A stretch of 63,482 nucleotides of DNA, filler included, from Reticulomyxa filosa (Eukaryota; Protista; Foraminifera), in NCBI GenBank assembly GCA_000512085.1. It is 12 parts of 12 records of this genome, joined end to end, with 100 filler letters (N's around TTAATTAATTAA, not from the genome) between each part and the next. Parts side by side here need not be neighbours in the genome. Positions count along the whole stretch, not along the records: positions 33,457 to 43,819 come from ASPP01025306.1; 11 more parts are not named here. The stretch is one strand, 5' to 3'. The position numbers were made by a program, and so were the translations under genes. Shown here one piece after another: positions 33,357 to 43,919 of this stretch. Positions within the stretch are counted from its first letter, which is position 1. Each line of letters opens with the position of its first letter. Under the pieces are notes generated by a model. It was not told the origin of the DNA, ran no database searches, and saw only the letters and a program-made list of their open reading frames with translations.

Positions 33357-33482
33357 NNNNNNNNNNNNNNNNNNNNNNNNNNNNNNNNNNNNNNNNNNNN
33401 TTAATTAATTAANNNNNNNNNNNNNNNNNNNNNNNNNNNNNNNNNNNNNNNNNNNNCGTTTTAACCAATTCAAACAATGAGA

Positions 33483-33490
<8 letters not shown>

Positions 33491-33544
<54 letters not shown>

Positions 33545-33557
33545 ATATATAATATAT
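33491..33557. repeat. (AT)n microsatellite, intronic
   Basis: Visible dinucleotide run. Confidence 0.95.
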
Positions 33558-33593
33558 AAAAGTGACAAAAAACAAGAATTACATTAAGTAGTA

Positions 33594-34254
33594 CTATTTT
33601 CTTTGTTTTTCATTGTCATTCTCTTTAAGCGCCTCAATTTGTTTTTGACTTTCCAATGTCTGCAATTTTTCAATGTGCAATTGTGATTGCAAATCTTTGA
33701 ACATTTTTTGAAATTGCTCGATCTGTGCATTCAGTGCATTGAATTGACTTTGAATATCCAATGAATTATTCTGTCGGCTTGCAAGTAATTGGCATGACGT
33801 CTCCAAATGGTGCTGCACTTCTTTTATCTCGCCTTTGAATCTGCAAATACTTTTTTCATCTTCTCTTGTTTTTGTTCTTTCACTCAGCTGTAGATCTTCA
33901 TTCGATTTGTATTGCCGAGGGCACATCACCAACAATTCTGAAACGCTTTGTCGTGCAGTTTTGCTTTTGAAAAATTCACAGTGGTCGTGCCGTCCAACTG
34001 GACATTTTCTATTGCTTTGTTGCAAATATTGCCGCAAGCATTCCTCTCCAATCAAAAAAAATTTGCTCAAAGTTTTCATGCTCGTCACAATGCAATTCCA
34101 CTGCATTGTTGGCTATTTGCTTACACAGCAGGCACGTCCAAGTATTTAACTTTTGTGGTTCATTTGTCAATGAAATCCAATCCTTGTTATAACAACCAGA
34201 AATTGAAAAGATGGCTGTTTTCTTCTCTTTTTCTCCTTCTTCAATTAACAACAT
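33594..34254 (-). CDS. RING-like/TRAF zinc-finger plus coiled-coil protein, 3'-truncated; one homopolymer frameshift near 34055
   Basis: CYNKDWI...TCLLCKQIANNAVELHCDEH, then (other frame) LIGEECLRQYL..SNRKCPVGRHDHC..VMCPRQY..CRFKGEIKEVQHHLETSC, then a heptad-rich coil. Confidence 0.75.
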
Positions 34255-34697
34255 ATTGTTTCTATAAATATCAAGTTTTTTTTAAAAGGCCTGTGAGGGA
34301 GTACGTAGAAAAAAAAAAAAAATTAAACAACACGTCTTTACAATACAAAGTAATTTCTCAAGTTGTAACATTTAACGTATTCTGCTTTATTTTTATCACA
34401 TCTTTTTTAATTGAAGCATTTTATCCCAAAAAAAAACTTGATGCACGTTTTTTTTTGGACGAGAGGTCTCTTTCAAACCTATTTTGACACTCATCAAAAT
34501 TGCAAACAAAGTAAATGTCTTTTCTTGATCACCATTTCTAGCCACGACAGTAATACTCGAATATATTCCGATTTGCAAACCTTCGTTTTTCGATCACTGC
34601 TTAAAAGTCCCCTTAAAAAAAAAAAGACCAGAGAGTTTTTTGTTTTGTAAAACTACTTTTTAACAAAAATTCCTATATAATAACGACAAAAGAAGTT

Positions 34698-35134
34698 ATG
34701 CTAAAACAAATTGACAATGTCAATAATGAAGATGAATTAAGCCATGCACAAAAGGAGAGTGCCCGACTATTAGGAGGGATGCAACAAGAGCCCACAAGCA
34801 AGAAGTACGCCAGGGAAATTCGAGTGTTGAAGAGATTATGTGGCGACATTATTGATGAAGAAGCGTTGAAAAAGCAAATGGAAGAAAGTAAAGGTGACAT
34901 ATCCTTAGTTATTGAGAACATAATTTCTAAGGTAATAACACAAAACAAACATATTATTAACATTGAAAAAAAAAAAAAAGATAACAACAACTGATTTAAG
35001 TACATTTCCAAAACAAACAAAATAGATGGATGTGCAAGACTCTGAAATAGAGGCCACGCAAGAGCTACCAGAAGCTAAGCATAAGCAGGTCCCTCTATAT
35101 TAGACTAGTTAACACATGATTTGATTGCAATGTG

Positions 35135-35180
<46 letters not shown>

Positions 35181-38100
35181 GAGTGAAGAAAATGCAAACA
35201 TAGAAAAAGATGGAAAATCAAAAATTCTAAAAAAAGAAGATGAAAAGAGAGAGACAGGAGAAATTAAGCCGGGAATGAATTTGCAAGGTTATTGCAGAAA
35301 TGTAAACTGTTTGGCGGCAAATGCACAGTTTCCTGTGTGGGTGAACGAACATTTAAAAGCATTTCACTCACAGCCGATAAGACACACTATCATTGTCCAG
35401 ATTGCAAGCAGTTAACAGTCACGTGCATTGCCAAGGTAATGTTTTTCAATTCCGAGTATTCGATCGCTACAGATGATGAGTCGGTGAATGTGAATGATAA
35501 CAATTACTCACGTACTTATCCAATCCGATCGGGATTAATATACAAATTGAAAGCTGACAAAATTAGACAACATGCAACAAGCTTGGAGGATTTAATCCAT
35601 CGAAGTGAAATTGCAATGACAAGTGAAGAGATCACAAGTTTGGTGAAGGAATTGGAGAAATATTCAATTACGGTTGTGAAACCGGACAAAGTCAAAGATA
35701 AGCAAAGACTATTGGAAAAAATCAAACATGATTACAATGGAGATTTTAATCAGGTATTTGATGTTGGTCGATTCACCATTTTATGTGAAGATCATATCAA
35801 ATTGAAAACAGCTGTAATGGTGATGAAGGAAGCCAAACAATTTAATTTGATTGTGTCTGAAGATAAAGATTTCTTTGATAAACAATCCAAAACACATCAT
35901 CGCTTTCATAACATTAAGTTGTATGTTCCGAAGCATGATGTCTATGTGGAGATGCAAGCCACATTGAAAAGTTACACAACTTTGGAAGGTTACAGTGTAA
36001 TTGAACACCCAAAATTGAGTCATTTATTTTATGAATTTATCAGGGCGTGGGAACCAAAAAATGCGAAGGAGGAGAATCTGAAACAGGCAAGTGATGAAAC
36101 ATTAACCAAAATCAATGATGTCATTTGTGGATGGATCAATGATAAGGCAATACAGAAACTAGCAAGCTGTTATAAATCTCATTCGGATATTGGAATATTA
36201 AGGCCAGCACAGTTGTTTAATAAAACGAAAGCAGAAATCGATAATAATATATCATTGACGATGGCACAATTTGTATATGAACAACTTTGCAACTTTATGC
36301 CAACGCAAACAAAGGGAAAAGCCATTCATTGGCTGCTGTATCAATACTATAAAGATTACATAATTGAAAACAAAAATCCGGCAAGCTGTGCTGATTTCGC
36401 ATTATTGTTGAAACAATCTACCAAACAAGAAATGGAAGAAGACATAACAATATTGCAAGCACTTGAAACATATATCCCGTTACAAGCAAATAATTATCCG
36501 TGCACTGATAATGACGACAATGGAAAACATGACTCATATGATTGCCATCAACGTGTCGTTGATTTGTTAGCCGAAGAAAAAAAGAACGAGCAAGAATACG
36601 AAAGAAACATAATGCTAATTCAAGGAAAGTCAGGATCAGGAAAAAGTCTATTTTGTCGTCATTTGGAAGAGTTTTTGTGGGAGTCATACACAAGTGGCTC
36701 CACAATATCCATCCCTCTTTATATTTCATTACCAAAGTGTTATAATGAATTAAATGAAAAACAAATCATTTCTCAAGCTTTACAAATGAAGCAAATCAAT
36801 AAAGAGATCATTGATGCTATTCGTGAGAATATTTCATTTGTATTTATTTTGGATGGATTTGATGAAATATTTGATAAATACAATAAGAACGACAGTGATG
36901 CAAGATATTTCTATGATCGATTCAATTTAAATGAATGGAATGCAAAAATCATTGTCACTTGTCGAAATCATGCGTTAAATGATGGAGATATTAAACATGT
37001 CTTAATTGGCCCAAACAACATGACAACAACATCAATGATATATTTGTGGCCTTTTTCAAAGGAACAAATGAATGGATATATTGAAAAGTTTGTGAAAATG
37101 AATAAAAAAAATAAAATGAATGATTATTCGAATTGGGCAACACAACAATATGAAGAGACATTAAGTAATTATCCAAATTTACATAAAATGATAGAAGAGC
37201 CATTTTTGCTTCGAATGATATTAACTGTGTTGCCATCATTGATGAAACAGCATCCGACTGGAACTAAAATATCAAAAGCACAAGTTTATGAAGCATTCAA
37301 TGAACAATGGATTGATATGCATATTAAAAACATTTCAGATAAATTATCAGAATTAAGGATTCAAATGAATCCTAAAAAAATCAAATTAGCATTCCAACGG
37401 TATTGTCAAGACTTAGCCTTTGAAATGTTTATTCAACAAAATCAAGTTGCAACAGAAAACGATAAGATCTTAAGCAAATCAGATTCAGAAACAGAAATGG
37501 ATGTTAAAAACGTAGATAAAGGTGTAGAAGCAAAAGTGAATGAAATTGATGCTTCAGGTGCAAACACGAAACATTTTTGGAAAAAATACTTTAATAATGG
37601 TAATGCTTCAAAAAGAAATGAAGACGACAAAAACCAAAATGTGAAGGAAAATATAAAATCAGAGTCACAAGATGTTTGGGCAAGGTATTTTAATGGTGAC
37701 AGTATTGCAAAATATGTATTGAGAAGAGTTGGTGATAACAAGTATCAATTTTTACATAAATCATGTCAAGAATATTATACCGCACAAAAAATCATATTTG
37801 ACATCCTTTCGTGTAAACATAATATCCTTGATAATATCGATAGTGCTGATCAACAATTCGAAACATATGTTCAAAAGTTATTTATCAATTACGAATTATT
37901 AAATGAAGAATTAGGAATTATTCATTTTATTGCAGAACGAATTCACGACACAAACCCAACATTTACAAACCTGAAGCCAAGATTGTTTCACATCATTGAA
38001 GCTTCGAAAACAAGTGTGCATGTCCAGGTTGCAGCGGCAAACGCAATCACCATACTCAATGCAGCAAATGTGAATATGCATTACAAAGATTGGAGTAATA

Positions 38101-40002
38101 TCAAAATTCCTCACGCAATTTTAGATCGTGCATTTCTTGAAGGAACTAATTTTAGTAATGCCAATCTGGACAATGTCACTTTTTATCAAGCTTGCTTAAA
38201 CAAGGCCAATTTCACAAACGCATCAATGAATGGTATTTACTTTGGAGAATATGCATATTTAGAAGGACATTTAAGTGCAGTAAGAGGAATTAAATTTTCA
38301 CCAGATGCGACAAAAATTATGTCCTATTCAGATGATAAGACCATTCGAATATGGGACGCATCATCAAGAAGGCTGCTTCATATACTGGAGGGACATTCAG
38401 ATCTTATAACTGGAGTTCAATTTTCGTCAGATTCTTCGAAGCTCGTTTCTTGTTCAAGGGACAAAACAATTCAAATGTGGAATGTAATGTCAGATCAGCA
38501 AAGTCAAGTATTGGAAGGGCACTCAAGTGGAGTAACAGCTGTCCAATTTTCACCAGATAATTCCAAAATTGTTTCTAGCTCGTTGAACGGAGATATTCGA
38601 ATTTGGGATGTATCATCTGGAAAACAAATTCAAATGTTGGAAGGACACTCACACTGTGTGAATGCAGTGCAATTTGTTTCAGATGGATCCAAGATTGTAT
38701 CATGTTCAAATGACAAAACAATTCGAATATGGGATGTGTTGACTGGAAGACAGCTTCGAATATTGGAAGGGCATGTAATGGATATACTTGGTGTAAAAAT
38801 TGTGGACAACGAATCAAAAATAATCTCTTATTCAAATGACAAGACTATTCGAATATGGGATTTGTCTTCAGACCAGTCAATAATATTGGAAGGACATTCA
38901 TATGGCATAGCAGGAATTCAAGTATCACCAGATGGTTCAAAAATTTTGTCATATTCAGATGATAAAACAATTCGAATATGGGACATTTTTTCTGGAAAAC
39001 AAATCCAAGTATTAGAAGGGCATTCACACATTGTAGGAACAGCACAATTCTCATCGGATGGCTCCAGGATTGTATCTGGCTCACGTGATAAGACAATTCG
39101 AATATGGGATGTGCTGTCAGGAAAACAGCTCCAAGTATTGGGAGGACATTCTTATAATGTAATTGGTGTGGAATTTTTCCCAAATGAGCCCAAAATCTTA
39201 TCGTGCTCATATGACAGGACAATTCGAATATGGATGTCCCTCTTGATAGACAAATTCAGTTAACAGAAGGACACATGGATAGTATAAACAAGGTTCAATT
39301 TTCACCAGATGGCTCCAAAGTTGTATCAGGATCGTGGGATAAAACAGTTCGGCTGTGGGATGTACAGTCAGGAAGACAAATACAAGTATTGGAAGGACAC
39401 ACAAGTGCTATATCTGGAGTTCAATTTTCTCCAGATGGATTAAAATCGTGTCTTGCTCAAATGATTCAACTATTCGTCTTTGGGATGCAATATCAGGAAA
39501 GCCACTTCATGTGTTGCGAGGACATTCGAATTCTATTCGTTCAGCGCAATTTTCGCCGGATGGATCCAAAATTGTGTCCTATTCGTTTGACAAAACCGTT
39601 CGAATATGGGATGTATCTTCAGGACAGCAAATTCAAATACAGACAGACTATCCTGGCGATGTCGATGCGATAAAATTTTCGTCGGACAGTTCCACTATTA
39701 TTCCATATAAAGAGAACAGCATAGCACAGCATTTATCCGATGAAAAATTAATTCAAGTGACACAAGGACATGCCGGTGTTACATTTGAAATGCAGTTGTC
39801 AGCAGATGGTTCCAAAATTGTATCAAGTTCAGGTGATAGAACCATTCGGCTATATGATGCCACTGGCCTTGAAATAAGATGTATTTGGCAAGCTGGAATT
39901 CAACGTTATGGTTTATTAATGAAATGGAGTGTTTGGAAAGGCGTAAAAGGCCTGAGTCATCAACAGAAATTGCTTGTAAGACAACGCGGTGGAAGGTTTT
40001 GA
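34698..40002 (+). CDS. NLR-like STAND protein: UBA/CUE-like, Zn-binding, RelA/SpoT-like nucleotidyltransferase, NACHT, pentapeptide repeats, about 13 WD40; 3 frameshifts (possible pseudogene or sequencing errors)
   Basis: Walker A IQGKSGSGKS (36624-36647); Walker B FVFILDGFDEI; IIVTCR; PFLLRM; YQFLHKSCQEYY; AAANAITILN plus pentapeptides; GH..WD repeats at 38260-39860; terminal GLSHQQKLLVRQRGG. Frameshifts lie near 35347, 39232 and 39440. Confidence 0.88.
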
Positions 40003-40713
40003 TTTTTTCAATTTTTTTGGGTATTCATTGCGAATGAAATTAAGTATTCTTAATACTTTAGATAATTTTTGCAAAATATTCCAGCACTTGTTACACTTGA
40101 CAAATTGCAAACCGTTTCTTAATAAAATAGAATAAGTTCAAACACTTATTATTTGGTAGACATATACAATAGAATGCTAAAAAAAAGAAAATTTTGTATT
40201 TGCAGCAGAATGCAAAAAAAAAAAGCTAATATCTGTGAGGTTTGCCGACTACCACTTGACTGGTACAAAGTGTAATACGAAAATCTCACTATATGAGCAA
40301 CTTTTCAATAAGAATAAGTAAATGCAAATCAACAGAATAACAATAACCAACAAAAACAAAAGAAAAGATAGAAAGTGAGAAGTAAGTTGGTGGAGAAGTT
40401 TTTTTTAAAAAGGGACTTCAAGATTCACTTGAACCTTGACACCAATAGTAGACCTTGTCCTACACAACTAAAATGGTACACTATAGAGATAATAGATTTT
40501 TTTTATGAAGAAAAACATTTAATCTAATTTCCTTCATATCTAGTCTTTATGTTGTTTTGTTTTTTGTTCATCTTTCCTTGTTGTCAACTTTCTTTTTGTA
40601 ATATATCAATCAAATGTTATGATGGATTTGACTGGACAAATTACCAGTTGAAAAAAAGATTTTTTTTCTGTAAAAGGGAAACACTCAGGACGTAATCTTC
40701 ATAATAATTGGTA

Positions 40714-43300
40714 ATGCTGCAAGAAAGTCTGCTAGGTAAAAAATTTTTGAAAGGAGTAGGCATTGTCTTTTTGAAATCTTCCATTGCAAATGAAGCCAAA
40801 AAAAAACAACAAGAAATAACGCAGGATAGCACAAGAAAAAGCGTGAGGGGTACCATTTACGATATTACAAACGCGGTGATACATATTGCAGATTTGGTAA
40901 CCGATTTGTATATATTAGCTCAATTCCACGAAAAAAAAAGACAAAAATATTTTTCTTGGAGTTTGGCGATATTGTTACTGGCACAGTTGGCGTATTGCAT
41001 AACCTTTGTGCGAAACTATTGTTATCGATGCACATTCCTGAAAAAAGTAATGTGGCTCATACTGCTGCTCCCATTTGCGTGGCTACTACCTTTTATATTC
41101 CACTTCTTCAGCAACTATCAATCATCAATGGCCCGATATCTCCACTTTTTTGGTCTTGGTGTTTCTGTGCCTTATGGTCCTTATGTGACTGGATTGAGGA
41201 AGTGGTCACTAATTTTTTTTTTCCTCAAAAAAATTATATCAACTTAATGTATACGTCTATGTAAATGTATATGTATACGTATAAACAGGTTGAAGAGACA
41301 AGAGATGCAAGAAAATGTTGAGTAAATGGATAAAAAAAATTTTACATTTTTAAGAAATGGCAAGCGAAAACGATAATAACAATGCATATTTTTTGTTTAC
41401 AAAAAAAAAAAATCGATTCCAAAATAAAAAAGATTGGATTTGTTATTGAAGCGTTGTTTGAAGGTTTGTTGTAAAAAGTCACTTGCAAGGACATGTTCAT
41501 AGGCGATCATTATAAAAATTTTGTTTTTTGTAACTATCTAAATTTTACTTATATGTGTATATGTATGTGTGATAGCGTTACCTCAAGCAATATTGCAAAT
41601 ATCAGCGATGCTGGTCTACAACGAGGCCAATGTAATGTCTGTAGTGTCTCTATTTGTTTCTATCGTCAGTATCTCCACGAAATTGCTGTTGGTCATTGAC
41701 TTCGACTTTGACAATGAAACGTATACTCGCATTTGGTTATGGCTCTGTATCGTTACAGGTTTTTTTGTTTTTTTTTTTTTGTATACGTATGCAAATGTAA
41801 TTCTATTATACGATAAAAGAGGACGAGTATAAAAAAAAAAAGGTTATATGTTTGTTTGCATTACTTGGATGCACAAGACTTCTTTGGTGCGTTTTTTGTC
41901 GCTGCACTTGTATTGGATGCACCGACGGCGGATGGGCATACGTATAATTTGATGAGCACTTTGTTTTATTACAAATTATTTATTGTAAGCATTCCGTTAA
42001 TTTTATGGCCTCATATCAACTATCTCTTAGGCGTAGTCATTGCTTTGACTTCAGGTCTCGTGCAAGAAATTCCAATAGGTTGTTATTTCTGCATTCTTTG
42101 TTGGTGCGGTTACTGCCATGTCATCATTCGTTTTGTCGGTATGGTCGCTGCTTCGACTTTGTTATGCCACTTTCCATTTTTTTTTTTTTTTAATTTTTTG
42201 ATGTCTAGTCGTTGACTCTTCTTAATTTTTTTTTCCACTCAAAAAAAAAAAAAAAAAGAGTGGAGTTGGCACATTTTACCATTCTCGCAATGCTCGTTCA
42301 ATTTGTATTAACAAAGCGTATTGCTCACTGTTATACATTTACACACATATATGTATATGTATTTGAATGCAATGTAAACAAATTTTTTTTTTGTTTTAAA
42401 AAAAAAAGCTAAGGAAACAGATTGGGATCAAGTTTTACAAGTGCTGTCATTTTTGCAAGAGGGACCTGATATAGGTCTACGTATGGCATGTGCAAACCAC
42501 GAATTTGGATATTTGAAGAGTTATCTGAATAAAGAGGTCGAAACCTTGTATGCTCACGTCACGTTGAAGACTTTACGTCAGGCTGGACAGTCTTCGTTTG
42601 CAAGAGGTAACTTTTTCTTTTGTTTTACTTGTAACATGTAATTTCGCTCATTTTTTTTTTTGAATGATAACTAATGTGTATGTACATATGTATATAAGTA
42701 CTTTTGCTTGAGTATATGGAACCGTGGAACCATGTGAAACAGAATATGCTTCCTCATTTGGCACAAGGAAGAAATATATGGACATGGAATGACCTTTTTG
42801 TTACTTTTTCTACATTTGGATTGACATTTATATTGCTTCCTCTGTATTCTCTGTCTCGTTTCTTAACTGTGCTTTTTCCTGTCATTTTTGCTTTATACGT
42901 ATACCACTTTGATTTATGGGCGCACGTTGGCACGTTGCAAATTGTTTTGACTTGCGTCTATTTCGCTTTGCAACTCATTTGCTGTGTCTTATTCATTCCT
43001 GTCTTCCGAATTCATTATCTTCTGTGGTTAAACTTTTTTTTTAGTAACACTAAAAAAAAGCAATTTATGTTTCAAGTGTTGTGTTGTTTTGGATGAAGGC
43101 ACATATCCCCTGGAGTGAAATTGATTACTCCCGATTGGAGTCGGTTGCCTCGAATTAAAAAAAGATATGATTTAGTCAAAGCTTGGCCTGTGCGAGAACA
43201 ATTGTTGAATGATATTTTTGGAAGTGATGTAACCCATGTTATTAACAGTTATTTGCCAAAGATTGATTTTGGGGATGACAATAGCCAGAAGAAAATATAA
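40714..43300 (+). CDS. XK-related (Xkr scramblase family) multi-pass membrane protein, multi-exon
   Basis: 'IHIADLVTDLYILAQF..KYFSWSLAILLLAQL' and the spliced 'IGFVIEALFE|ALPQAILQ...SLFVSIVSISTK' match the XK-family D..TD and E...E..PQ..LQ motifs. Confidence 0.7.
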
Positions 43301-43919
43301 ATTTTTTTATGATTACTTCAACCGCTTGATTAAAAGAATAAGTAACCTTTTTATTCAATAGCAAGCAGCTCCCCCTTTTTTTTTGTAATGACCAATATTT
43401 CTTTAATTTGTCTCGCATTAAATTTAAAAGTAAAAATAAAAAAATTCACTAATTGACTCTAGCATATAATTTGACAAAAAGCAACAATTTTAAAATATTT
43501 AAACGATATTAATGGCTGGAAAAAAGTTATTGATACTTGAAGTTGTTTTCATTCATACATTTAAAAATCATTTTTGGCTCGAAAAAAAAATTTGTTTAAG
43601 TGAAAAAAAGTCGTTGGATGATATATTATAAAAATTATTAGCTCCTTCAGACTGTGGAAGAAGAAAGCATTGGAAATCCCTCTTTTGCTAAAAAAGTAAA
43701 ATACAAGTACTTTATTTTTTCAACTAATCGGGGTCCCTTGCGCGATCATCGAGAAGTCCATTGTTCATCATTTTAAAAAAAAGAACAAACAACAAACATC
43801 CAAAAAGCGGTGATATTGANNNNNNNNNNNNNNNNNNNNNNNNNNNNNNNNNNNNNNNNNNNNTTAATTAATTAANNNNNNNNNNNNNNNNNNNNNNNNN
43901 NNNNNNNNNNNNNNNNNNN

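What the first reader, a model, noticed from the sequence alone, without database searches (positions are those of the whole stretch)
35620..36050. RelA/SpoT (alarmone-synthetase-fold) effector domain fused to a NACHT-WD40 NLR-like receptor in a protist
Seen in sequence: N-terminal to the NACHT is 'KPDKVKDKQRLLEKIKHDYNGDFNQVFDVGRFTILCED...VSEDKDFFDKQSKTHHRFHNIKLYVPKHDVYVEMQATL'. Established: RelA/SpoT synthetase domains follow the order (R)xK..S..EK / D..g.R / KDy...k.nGY.slH / EiQiRT. Here the Lys, EK, metal-binding Asp (FDVGR), KD and catalytic Glu-x-Gln (VEMQ) fall in that order with plausible spacing. The guanine-stacking GY is replaced by HH, so the acceptor may not be GDP/GTP. RelA_SpoT N-termini are annotated in some fungal NLRs, and bacterial toxSAS/CapRel enzymes act as toxic defence effectors. 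Inference: ligand binding by the WD40 propeller oligomerises the NACHT and switches on a nucleotide-messenger or toxic pyrophosphotransferase. That would be an apparently uncharacterised rhizarian innate-immunity or allorecognition system.
Basis: partly seen in the sequence, partly recalled or inferred. Interest (0 to 1): 0.9.

Follow-up and report, generated by a model that had tools for sequence, protein, structure and literature searches.

The report
Alarmone-synthetase-like effector on protist NLR
A gene of the amoeboid foraminifer Reticulomyxa filosa joins a divergent bacterial-toxin-like RelA/SpoT (alarmone synthetase) domain to a NACHT-WD40 immune-receptor scaffold, an architecture so far described only in fungi and not annotated in this organism.

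Summary
The quoted residues lie in ORF 35292-39263 (+), and the domain at about 35577-36134 has the RelA/SpoT-homologue (RSH) synthetase fold.

- **Pfam:** PF04607 alone is sub-threshold (22.4 bits; cut-off 27).
- **Profiles:** a Reticulomyxa-only profile hits only the (p)ppApp-synthetase toxin Tas1 in the PDB. It matches a bacterial/metagenomic RelA_SpoT-positive family at hhalign probability 99.5%, E 1e-22.
- **Structure:** an AlphaFold model (pLDDT 85.7) returns only RSH synthetases among the top 50 Foldseek hits. Z is 12.7-13.3 to RelQ, RelP and Tas1.
- **Motifs:** the donor-ATP Lys/Arg/Lys, the Mg-Asp and the Glu-x-Gln are 90-100% conserved in about 30 paralogue clusters. The acceptor loop reads H-H where the family has G-Y (Y or F in 8 of 30 clusters).
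- **Selection:** pN is 0.11-0.15 against pS 0.63-0.78.
- **Downstream:** an intact NACHT, pentapeptide repeats and about 13 WD40 repeats.
- **Upstream:** a CUE-like exon and a Cys-rich beta module.

This copy has three single-base frame breaks in short runs of one base, which could be assembly errors or decay.

RelA_SpoT-NACHT-WD40 NLRs are already catalogued in fungi, so the architecture is not new. The rhizarian family, its Tas1-like affinity and its altered acceptor loop are. Enzyme activity, product and activation by oligomerisation remain inference.

The parts
34698..34931 (+). Probable first exon: CUE/UBA-like N-terminal segment, ending at a GT splice donor
   Evidence: Matches the N-termini of paralogues P0002, P0007, P0018, P0027 and others (blastp E 2e-14 to 2e-8; tblastn 34722-34946). 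Pfam CUE is only E 0.032.
35185..35561 (+). Cys-rich beta module (consensus GINLxGxCxNxxCLA...WxNxG...CPxC), read in two frames with a frame change near 35341-35346
   Evidence: Both halves match paralogues collinearly, with no length difference across the break. The module is modelled as a beta domain at pLDDT 83-92 in paralogue P0003. No Pfam family.
35577..36134 (+). RelA/SpoT-homologue (RSH) synthetase-fold domain, Tas1-like (ORF aa 96-281)
   Evidence: PF04607 22.4 bits, E 1.6e-4. PDB profile hits: Tas1, RelP and RelQ. AF2 pLDDT 85.7. Foldseek top 50 all RSH. Z 12.7-13.3 over model residues 6-191. hhalign 99.5%.
35694..35720 (+). Basic donor-ATP motif K135-x3-R139-x3-K143 on the helix after beta-1
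   Evidence: Aligned to Tas1 K-SRE-R-AMQ-K. Conserved 28/29, 26/30 and 30/31 in paralogue clusters.
35760..35771 (+). D157-V-G-R160: putative Mg-binding Asp and following Arg at the start of beta-2
   Evidence: Aligned to Tas1 D-LA-R and to the Asp of RelP/YwaC. D 28/30, R 27/29.
35895..35903 (+). Acceptor ('G') loop H202-H203-R204 in place of the family's G-Y-R/S
   Evidence: Alignment to Tas1 'LGYSG' and RelP 'NGYRS'. H202 31/31. Position 203 is H in 21, Y in 7, F in 1 and R in 1.
35949..35957 (+). E220-M-Q222: catalytic Glu-x-Gln strand
   Evidence: E is the only invariant column across Reticulomyxa plus bacterial relatives. It aligns to Tas1 'GEIQ' and RelP 'EIQ'. E 23/25, Q 26/28.
36021..36044 (+). 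H244-x3-E248-x2-R251 helix (family motif H..YE..R)
   Evidence: Aligned to Tas1 'GHKYYEDWR'. Conserved at 90% or more.
36609..37094 (+). NACHT NTPase domain, with Walker A GKSGSGKS (36624-36647) and Walker B VFILDGFDE (36840-36866)
   Evidence: PF05729 E 6.7e-10, 39.5 bits, above the cut-off of 26.7. Motifs found by script.
38067..38249 (+). Pentapeptide repeats between the NACHT-associated helical region and the WD40 array
   Evidence: PF00805 E 3.6e-7, 30.1 bits, above the cut-off of 20.2. Also present in 4 paralogues.
38232..40002 (+). About 13 WD40 repeats (enough for two propellers), read in three frames (to 39233; 39230-39440; 39445-39999), stop at 40000-40002. Frame changes near 39219-39233 and 39438-39446
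   Evidence: PF00400 E 6.8e-79 with 8 stretches, plus 2 and 3 stretches in the next two frames. Repeat units listed. Collinear with paralogue P0005 across the breaks.

Best explanation
This is one copy of a Reticulomyxa filosa-expanded family of NLR-type (STAND) receptors. Its domain order is: CUE-like segment, Cys-rich beta module, RSH synthetase-fold domain, NACHT NTPase, pentapeptide repeats, about 13 WD40 repeats. Shown: the RSH fold, its closest kinship to Tas1-like bacterial toxin domains, retention of the donor-ATP, Mg and Glu-x-Gln residues, strong purifying selection, and an intact NACHT. Inferred: the RSH domain is the executing effector. In the resting state the receptor is closed. 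A ligand bound by the WD40 propellers allows nucleotide exchange and oligomerisation of the NACHT. That releases or assembles the N-terminal RSH domains, which transfer pyrophosphate from ATP to the 3'-OH of a purine nucleotide acceptor. This most likely resembles Tas1/FaRel (p)ppApp synthesis, which consumes ATP. The result would be local growth arrest or death of the affected part of the syncytial cell, in defence or allorecognition. The H-H acceptor loop suggests an acceptor preference different from classical GDP/GTP enzymes.
For: Fold and homology:
- PF04607 E 1.6e-4.
- A paralogue-only profile hits only Tas1 in the PDB, E 3.6e-4.
- hhalign of Reticulomyxa-only against bacterial relatives gives 99.5%, E 9.8e-23 over 174 columns. 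Those relatives hit Tas1 at 1.4e-20, the small alarmone synthetases and long RSH, and some pass Pfam's RelA_SpoT cut-off (P0052, 40.6 bits).
- AF2 pLDDT 85.7. The Foldseek top 50 are all RSH, with Tas1 first at 3.5e-8. Z is 12.7-13.3 over 161-172 residues, against about 8 for other nucleotidyltransferases.
- A model of paralogue P0003 built without any bacterial rows still hits Tas1 first.

Active-site retention:
- K135, R139, K143, D157, R160, E220, Q222, H244, E248 and R251 are 87-97% conserved, against a background of 0.69.
- They sit on the expected helix and strands of the model, matching the FaRel2 description in PMC11782079.

Selection: pN 0.11-0.15 against pS 0.63-0.78 between four paralogous loci.

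Scaffold: NACHT, Walker motifs, pentapeptide and WD40. The same architecture recurs in paralogues.

Precedent:
- Fungal NLRs with RelA_SpoT N-termini are classed as direct enzymatic effectors (PMC4986451; PMC12258605).
- Tas1 and FaRel kill by (p)ppApp synthesis and ATP depletion (PMC11782079).
- The nearest bacterial relative P0057 carries an eCIS_core toxin-delivery domain.
Against: - No biochemical data exist for this family or for the fungal RelA_SpoT NLRs.
- The Pfam score is below the gathering cut-off.
- The acceptor loop lacks the family's Gly-Tyr in this copy, and the 'RT' after E-x-Q is absent (EMQATL), so the acceptor and even the chemistry could differ.
- This copy has three frame breaks and may be a pseudogene.
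- No RNA or DNA reads could be obtained.
- Activation by oligomerisation is by analogy only. Tas1 is a monomer and RelQ/RelP are tetramers, so no rule for induced-proximity activation of RSH domains is known.
- Whether (p)ppApp is toxic in a eukaryotic cytosol is untested.
Confidence: 0.55

Rival explanations
1. The RSH domain is active but acts like FaRel2 or CapRel. It pyrophosphorylates the 3' CCA end of tRNA and shuts off translation, rather than making a free nucleotide.
For: CapRel aligns at Z 10.3-11.1 over 166 residues, close to the Tas1/SAS values. The model has the two N-terminal helices (8-19, 22-33) that in FaRel2 anchor tRNA (PMC11782079). An altered acceptor loop is compatible with a non-nucleotide acceptor.
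Against: Sequence kinship is clearly closest to Tas1: it is the only PDB hit of the paralogue-only profile. CapRel does not appear in any sequence search. The acceptor-loop region is very basic (KQSKTHHRFHNIK), like the large positive patch described for alarmone synthetases rather than the small one of FaRel2. That last reading is mine and is not computed.
Confidence: 0.15
2. The domain is a catalytically silent RSH-fold module. It would be kept as a nucleotide-binding regulatory domain or an oligomerisation/adaptor domain, not as an enzyme.
For: Gly-Tyr of the acceptor loop is replaced by His-His. Pfam is sub-threshold. The large divergent family has no known product. Purifying selection would also be seen for a structural role.
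Against: The residues that are nearly invariant are those with catalytic or ATP/Mg-binding roles in RSH enzymes (K135, R139, K143, D157, E220, Q222). E220 is the only column invariant across Reticulomyxa and bacterial relatives. Pseudoenzymes usually lose such residues.
Confidence: 0.15
3. This particular copy is a decaying pseudogene of an otherwise functional family. This rival concerns the locus, not the family.
For: There are three frame changes: near 35341-35346, 39219-39233 and 39438-39446. The family is large, and such families carry many dead copies.
Against: All three breaks are single-base shifts in short runs of one base, with the reading continuing collinearly with intact paralogues and without length change. 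There is no in-frame stop or indel within the 1323-codon main ORF. Paralogous loci in the same assembly show gene models split in the same way at the WD40 end, which suggests assembly error. pN is much lower than pS for this copy too.
Confidence: 0.3
4. The enzyme makes a bacterial-type alarmone ((p)ppGpp or (p)ppApp) aimed at bacteria rather than at the host cell. The targets would be prey, symbionts or intracellular invaders. This is the idea Dyrka et al. raised for fungal RelA_SpoT NLRs.
For: The hypothesis is stated in PMC4986451. To my knowledge, R. filosa is a bacterivorous amoeboid organism. Exported alarmone synthetases exist in bacteria (PMC12691689).
Against: No signal peptide or export module is seen. 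The domain is embedded in a cytosolic-type NLR scaffold. Nucleotides do not readily cross membranes.
Confidence: 0.08

Closest known systems
Fungal NLRs with an N-terminal RelA_SpoT domain (for example RelA_SpoT-NACHT-WD40 of Gaeumannomyces graminis; Dyrka et al. 2014, PMC4986451; Sordariales survey, PMC12258605)
   Same: The three-part logic is the same: an RSH-type enzymatic N-terminus, a NACHT and WD40 repeats. Both occur in organisms with a syncytial lifestyle. Both are classed from sequence only, with no biochemistry.
   Different: A different eukaryotic supergroup (Rhizaria). The domain is below Pfam's cut-off, whereas the fungal ones were found by Pfam. This family has an extra CUE-like segment, a Cys-rich beta module and pentapeptide repeats. 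No fungal protein appeared among the 64 hits in 1.84 billion representatives; only 31 of the 64 were looked up by name, and none of those was fungal. That hints at separate acquisition, but no tree was built.
Tas1 (Apk1), the type VI secretion (p)ppApp synthetase toxin of Pseudomonas aeruginosa (PDB 6OX6)
   Same: Best sequence hit and best Foldseek hit, at 20% identity over about 172-204 aligned positions. Both share the K-x3-R-x3-K, D-x-x-R, E-x-Q and H-x3-E-x2-R motifs, including the three-residue D-to-R spacing where RelP/YwaC have five.
   Different: Tas1 has G-Y in the acceptor loop where this family has H-H/Y. Tas1 is a secreted bacterial toxin neutralised by the immunity protein Tis1. 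Here the domain is fused to a eukaryotic receptor scaffold, and no immunity gene is seen.
toxSAS toxins and the fused sensor-toxin CapRel (FaRel, FaRel2, CapRel SJ46; PMC11782079, PMC7229694)
   Same: An RSH synthetase fold used as a growth-arresting effector, held inactive until a trigger. CapRel couples a sensor to the toxin in one polypeptide. Z 10.3-11.1.
   Different: Control there is by small antitoxin or pseudo-zinc-finger domains, not by a STAND NTPase with repeat sensors. There is no detectable sequence match to CapRel.
Small alarmone synthetases RelQ (SAS1) and RelP (SAS2)
   Same: Highest structural Z (12.2-13.3 over 156-163 residues). Profile hit to YwaC at E 1.3e-6.
   Different: They are housekeeping (p)ppGpp makers, tetrameric, with G-Y and E-x-Q-x-R-T motifs, and are not fused to receptors.

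Membership tests
RelA/SpoT homologue (RSH) synthetase superfamily | Synthetase alpha/beta fold (mixed sheet with flanking helices), distinct from other Pol-beta-type nucleotidyltransferases | tested here: met
   The Foldseek top 50 are all RSH. Z is 12.7-13.3 to RelQ/RelP/Tas1, against about 8 for Cid1/TUTases. The ESM Atlas neighbours carry PF04607.
RelA/SpoT homologue (RSH) synthetase superfamily | Basic donor-ATP triphosphate motif after beta-1 (R/K-x-K ... S/R ... K) | tested here: met
   K135, R139 and K143 align to the Tas1 and RelP motif and are 87-97% conserved. The first Arg of R-x-K is not conserved here (position 133 varies), nor in Tas1 (P-I-K).
RelA/SpoT homologue (RSH) synthetase superfamily | Mg-coordinating Asp at the start of beta-2 | tested here: met
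   D157 is aligned, is present in 28/30 paralogue clusters, and is nearly invariant with the bacterial relatives.
RelA/SpoT homologue (RSH) synthetase superfamily | Acceptor ('G') loop with Gly-Tyr, the Tyr stacking on the acceptor base | tested here: not met
   This copy has H202-H203. H202 is invariant in the family. Position 203 is H in 21, Y in 7 and F in 1. An aromatic or imidazole side chain is kept, but the motif as defined is not.
RelA/SpoT homologue (RSH) synthetase superfamily | Catalytic Glu in the E-x-Q strand | tested here: met
   E220 is invariant across all 24 aligned sequences. Q222 is present in 26/28. The following R-T of long RSH/SAS is absent, as in Tas1.
RelA/SpoT homologue (RSH) synthetase superfamily | Pfam PF04607 gathering score | tested here: not met
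   22.4 bits against a cut-off of 27. 4 of 24 related proteins reach E < 1e-3. Membership rests on profile-profile and fold evidence.
RelA/SpoT homologue (RSH) synthetase superfamily | ATP-dependent pyrophosphate transfer to a 3'-OH | not testable with these tools
   This needs an enzyme assay.
Tas1/Apk1-like (p)ppApp synthetase clade | Closer to Tas1 than to other RSH groups | tested here: inconclusive
   Tas1 is the best sequence and Foldseek hit, and the D-x-x-R spacing is shared. However, the structural Z ties with RelQ/RelP, and no phylogeny with the published Apk1/Tas1 set was possible.
Tas1/Apk1-like (p)ppApp synthetase clade | Adenine-nucleotide acceptor specificity | not testable with these tools
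   No sequence rule for acceptor choice was found in the papers read.
NLR / STAND receptors (NACHT clade) | NACHT NTPase with Walker A and Walker B (hhhhDGhDE) | tested here: met
   PF05729 39.5 bits, above 26.7. GKSGSGKS and VFILDGFDE are present.
NLR / STAND receptors (NACHT clade) | C-terminal superstructure-forming repeats as the sensor | tested here: met
   About 13 WD40 repeats, preceded by pentapeptide repeats.
NLR / STAND receptors (NACHT clade) | Ligand-induced oligomerisation that activates the N-terminal domain | not testable with these tools
   Inferred from the family. No complex prediction or experiment was done.
Fungal-type NLRs with highly similar, concertedly evolving WD40 repeats (HNWD-like) | Near-identical tandem repeat units at the DNA level | tested here: not met
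   Tandem Repeats Finder found no array in 38000-40050. The repeat units are similar as protein but diverged.

The most novel reading that the evidence does not exclude
A rhizarian protist independently captured a Tas1-like bacterial toxin domain and wired it to NACHT-WD40 receptors. On receptor activation, the domain, with its remodelled His-His acceptor loop, pyrophosphorylates an adenine nucleotide or a non-canonical acceptor. That would make hyperphosphorylated-nucleotide synthesis and ATP depletion a eukaryotic NLR death or signalling output, in parallel with the NADase output of TIR domains.
Probability: 0.3. Interest if true: 0.8.

Novelty: new variant of a known kind. Interest (0 to 1): 0.6.

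Why it matters
NLR-type receptors in animals, plants, fungi and bacteria use a small set of executing domains. For most fungal-type enzymatic N-termini, including RelA_SpoT, nobody has shown what they do.

A second, independent eukaryotic lineage has the same pairing, expanded to dozens of copies and under strong purifying selection. That argues the pairing is functional rather than accidental. It also gives a compact domain of about 190 aa that can be expressed and assayed.

Its closest solved relative is an ATP-depleting (p)ppApp toxin. This suggests a concrete and testable death mechanism. It would extend alarmone-type nucleotide chemistry into eukaryotic cell-autonomous immunity or allorecognition.

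It also corrects the public annotation. The paralogues are named only 'hypothetical', 'NACHT domain-containing' or 'NB-ARC domain-containing'.

Tried and rejected
- **NCBIfam and PADLOC** scans of the domain found nothing relevant.
- **Sequencing runs.** I looked for runs to decide whether the three frame breaks are real and whether the gene is expressed. None was listed.
- **Tandem Repeats Finder** on the WD40 DNA found no array. This rejects fungal-style near-identical repeats.
- **Cys-rich N-terminal module.** Pfam, the protein atlas (only unnamed rotifer clusters) and Foldseek on the two-domain model (only non-significant BclA-like rows, probability 0.15) left it unexplained. Whether it docks on the RSH active site as an autoinhibitor, like the pseudo-zinc-finger of CapRel/ATfaRel2, could not be read from the outputs. 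I do not claim it.
- **Contexts of distant relatives** gave no toxin-immunity or secretion neighbourhood of use. P0064 sits on a phage-like 95 kb contig and P0058 in an ordinary bacterial neighbourhood.
- **Literature searches** for Reticulomyxa with NACHT or NLR, and for STAND NTPase with RelA SpoT, found no prior description.
Cid1/TUTase-type matches score Z of about 8, against 12.7-13.3 for RSH.
- **Not done, under the operators' rule.** All searches used the pieces by reference.
Full report
**What is there**

The piece (33457-43819) is AT-rich (about 30-40% G+C). It carries one long ORF, 35292-39263 on the + strand, 1323 codons. KPDKVKDK begins at 35679 (aa 130) and VEMQATL ends at 35966 (aa 225).

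Close relatives of the region are almost all proteins of Reticulomyxa filosa, assembly GCA_000512085.1. So the source is this naked freshwater foraminifer (Rhizaria). A few 40-51% identical fragments come from metagenomes (P0016, P0024, P0037).

**Is the N-terminal domain RelA/SpoT-like?**

Taken alone, Pfam RelA_SpoT (PF04607) scores 22.4 bits, E 1.6e-4. That is below the curated cut-off of 27, so the public annotation pipelines miss it. The paralogues are named 'hypothetical', 'NACHT domain-containing' or 'NB-ARC domain-containing'. Four further lines of evidence settle the question.

1. **PDB sequence searches.**
   - A plain phmmer search ranks Tas1 (6OX6), the type VI (p)ppApp-synthetase toxin, first (E 0.021).
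   - A profile of 16 Reticulomyxa sequences hits Tas1 only (E 3.6e-4).
   - After adding eight distant bacterial, phage or metagenome relatives, the profile hits Tas1 at 2e-15, YwaC/RelP at 1.3e-6, and then RelA/Rel.

2. **The link to the distant relatives is not circular.**
   - hhalign of the Reticulomyxa-only profile against a profile of the distant relatives alone gives probability 99.5%, E 9.8e-23 over 174 columns.
   - That second profile hits Tas1 (1.4e-20), the small alarmone synthetases and the long RSH enzymes.
   - Some of its members pass Pfam's own cut-off (P0052, 40.6 bits). One (P0057) carries an eCIS_core toxin-delivery domain.

3. **Structure.**
   - An AlphaFold2 model of window:35562-36260 has mean pLDDT 85.7.
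   - All 50 best Foldseek matches in the PDB are RSH synthetases, with Tas1 first (E 3.5e-8).
   - Re-alignment gives Z 13.3, 13.1 and 12.7 to RelQ, RelP and Tas1 over 161-172 residues. Other nucleotidyltransferases (Cid1, TUT7, GLD-2) reach only about 8.
   - A second model, of paralogue P0003:1-369, was built from Reticulomyxa rows only. It again finds Tas1 first (1.2e-6), so the fold is not imported from bacterial rows in the alignment.
   - ESM Atlas neighbours are RelA_SpoT clusters.

4. **Motifs.** The motifs fall on the right elements of the model.
   - K135-x3-R139-x3-K143 lies on the helix after beta-1. This is the basic triphosphate-binding helix described for FaRel2 (PMC11782079).
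   - D157 lies at the start of beta-2.
   - E220-M-Q222 lies in the later strand.
   - H244-x3-E248-x2-R251 lies in the following helix.

**Are the key residues kept?**

47 cluster representatives were aligned to the family profile. About 25-31 of them cover each position.

| Residue | Conserved in |
|---|---|
| K135 | 28/29 |
| R139 | 26/30 |
| K143 | 30/31 |
| D157 | 28/30 |
| R160 | 27/29 |
| E220 | 23/25 |
| Q222 | 26/28 |
| H244 | 28/30 |
| E248 | 30/31 |
| R251 | 28/31 |

An average column has a commonest-residue frequency of 0.69, and only 17% of columns reach 0.9. E220 is the only column invariant across Reticulomyxa and the bacterial relatives together.

Between this locus and three paralogous loci, the RSH domain shows pN 0.11-0.15 against pS 0.63-0.78 (Nei-Gojobori). 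Synonymous sites are saturated, so omega is at most about 0.1. The domain is at least as constrained as the NACHT domain.

The one defining motif that is not kept is the acceptor loop. Where RSH enzymes have G-Y, with the Tyr stacking on the acceptor base, this copy has H202-H203. H202 is invariant in the family. Position 203 is His in 21 clusters, Tyr in 7 and Phe in 1.

**The rest of the gene**

- **NACHT.** Downstream lies a NACHT domain (PF05729, 39.5 bits; Walker A GKSGSGKS at 36624, Walker B VFILDGFDE at 36840).
- **Repeats.** After a helical region come pentapeptide repeats (PF00805), then about 13 WD40 repeats, enough for two propellers.
- **Cys-rich module.** Upstream, the reading continues into a Cys-rich module conserved in paralogues (GINLxGxCxNxxCLA...CPxC). 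It is predicted as a beta domain and has no known family.
- **CUE-like exon.** Further upstream, beyond probable introns, is a CUE/UBA-like exon (34698-34931). It matches the N-termini of several paralogues, though Pfam CUE is only E 0.032.
- **Paralogues.** The full architecture recurs in them. P0005 is collinear with 35352-39233 at 59% identity. Of 24 related proteins scanned, 7 carry NACHT, 4 WD40 and 4 pentapeptide repeats; many of these gene models are cut by short contigs.

**Integrity of this copy**

The gene as assembled changes frame three times: near 35341-35346, 39219-39233 and 39438-39446. Each is a single-base shift in a short run of one base. The reading resumes collinearly with the paralogues.

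Paralogous loci of the same assembly show gene models split in the same way. I therefore lean towards assembly error, at about 0.7 against 0.3 for real decay. I could not check this, because no sequencing run was listed. All searches used the pieces.

**How it probably works**

Shown: the fold, the kinship to Tas1-like toxin domains, the retained catalytic set, purifying selection, and an intact STAND NTPase with repeat sensors.

Inferred from what is established for NLR/STAND proteins and for toxSAS and Tas1:
- The WD40 array senses a ligand.
- The NACHT exchanges nucleotide and oligomerises.
- The N-terminal RSH domains are then released or brought together.
- They transfer pyrophosphate from ATP to a purine nucleotide. 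The outcome resembles Tas1/FaRel: (p)ppApp accumulates and ATP is depleted.
- The result is local arrest or death in a syncytial cell.

The rivals are tRNA-CCA pyrophosphorylation of the CapRel/FaRel2 type, a silent regulatory fold, and an alarmone aimed at bacteria (the Dyrka et al. idea). The sequence cannot tell the acceptor. None of the papers read gives a rule for it.

**Comparison with what is known**

RelA_SpoT-NACHT-WD40 proteins are already catalogued in fungi (PMC4986451). RelA_SpoT is treated there as a canonical fungal NLR N-terminus (PMC12258605), although it has not been functionally studied. The architecture is therefore not new in kind. The following points are new:

- **Lineage.** No paper was found linking Reticulomyxa to NACHT or NLR proteins.
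- **Expansion.** There are dozens of 50%-identity clusters.
- **Divergence.** The domain falls below Pfam's threshold.
- **Nearest relatives.** They are bacterial, phage or metagenomic Tas1-like proteins, not fungal ones. Among the 64 hits in 1.84 billion representatives, 31 were looked up by source name and none was fungal. No tree was built, so independent capture is suggested but not shown.
- **Acceptor loop.** It reads His-His.
- **Extra modules.** The CUE-like segment, the Cys-rich beta module and the pentapeptide repeats.
- **Repeat DNA.** Unlike fungal HNWD genes, the WD40 repeats are not near-identical at the DNA level.

**Verdict**

The fold and architecture interpretation is supported. 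The mechanism is plausible but untested.

Noticed in passing
window 35131-35181: A run of about 30 T directly followed by about 20 A. It lies in the probable intron just upstream of the exon that starts the Cys-rich module. Long runs of one base like this are where the assembly is least trustworthy.
   Followed up: no
window 35185-35561; paralogues P0003:30-137 and others: A conserved Cys-rich beta module (four invariant or near-invariant Cys, C-x4-C ... C-x2-C) sits directly before the RSH domain. It has no Pfam family. The only look-alikes by language-model features are unnamed rotifer protein clusters (score 0.90-0.93). It could be a zinc-binding regulator of the RSH domain, reminiscent of the pseudo-zinc-finger antitoxins of toxSAS. 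This was not tested.
   Followed up: partly
window 33594-34106 (-): A 170-aa ORF on the opposite strand has a Cys/His-rich start (CPVGRHDHC...) and a coiled-coil-like tail. There is no significant Pfam family. It is probably a separate neighbouring gene.
   Followed up: partly
window 40708-43096 (+): A series of ORFs rich in hydrophobic stretches (40708-41247, 41569-41832, 41856-42215, 42704-43096). They look like exons of a multi-pass membrane protein gene downstream of the NLR. There is no Pfam match.
   Followed up: partly
L001 8001-9983 (protein P0064): A distant RSH-like relative (660 aa, RelA_SpoT E 1.5e-4) lies on a 95 kb contig of many small same-strand genes with a UvrD-type helicase and a LAGLIDADG hit, which looks phage-like. 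The ESM Atlas shape search also returned clusters from Nucleocytoviricota and Uroviricota. So Tas1-like folds may be common in large viruses.
   Followed up: no
L007 4364-7224 and L008 7357-7827: In paralogous R. filosa loci, the annotated NLR gene is followed at once by a second gene model made of WD40 repeats. The public gene models of this family are therefore often split at the repeat region, as in this window.
   Followed up: partly
L005 508-2025 (protein P0052) and L006 (P0048): The two nearest non-Reticulomyxa relatives with a full domain share the RFT(V/I)xC and Y(V/I)EMQ motifs with this family. They join the RSH domain to ankyrin and/or TPR repeats without an NTPase in the part seen. 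They come from short metagenome contigs of unknown organism.
   Followed up: partly
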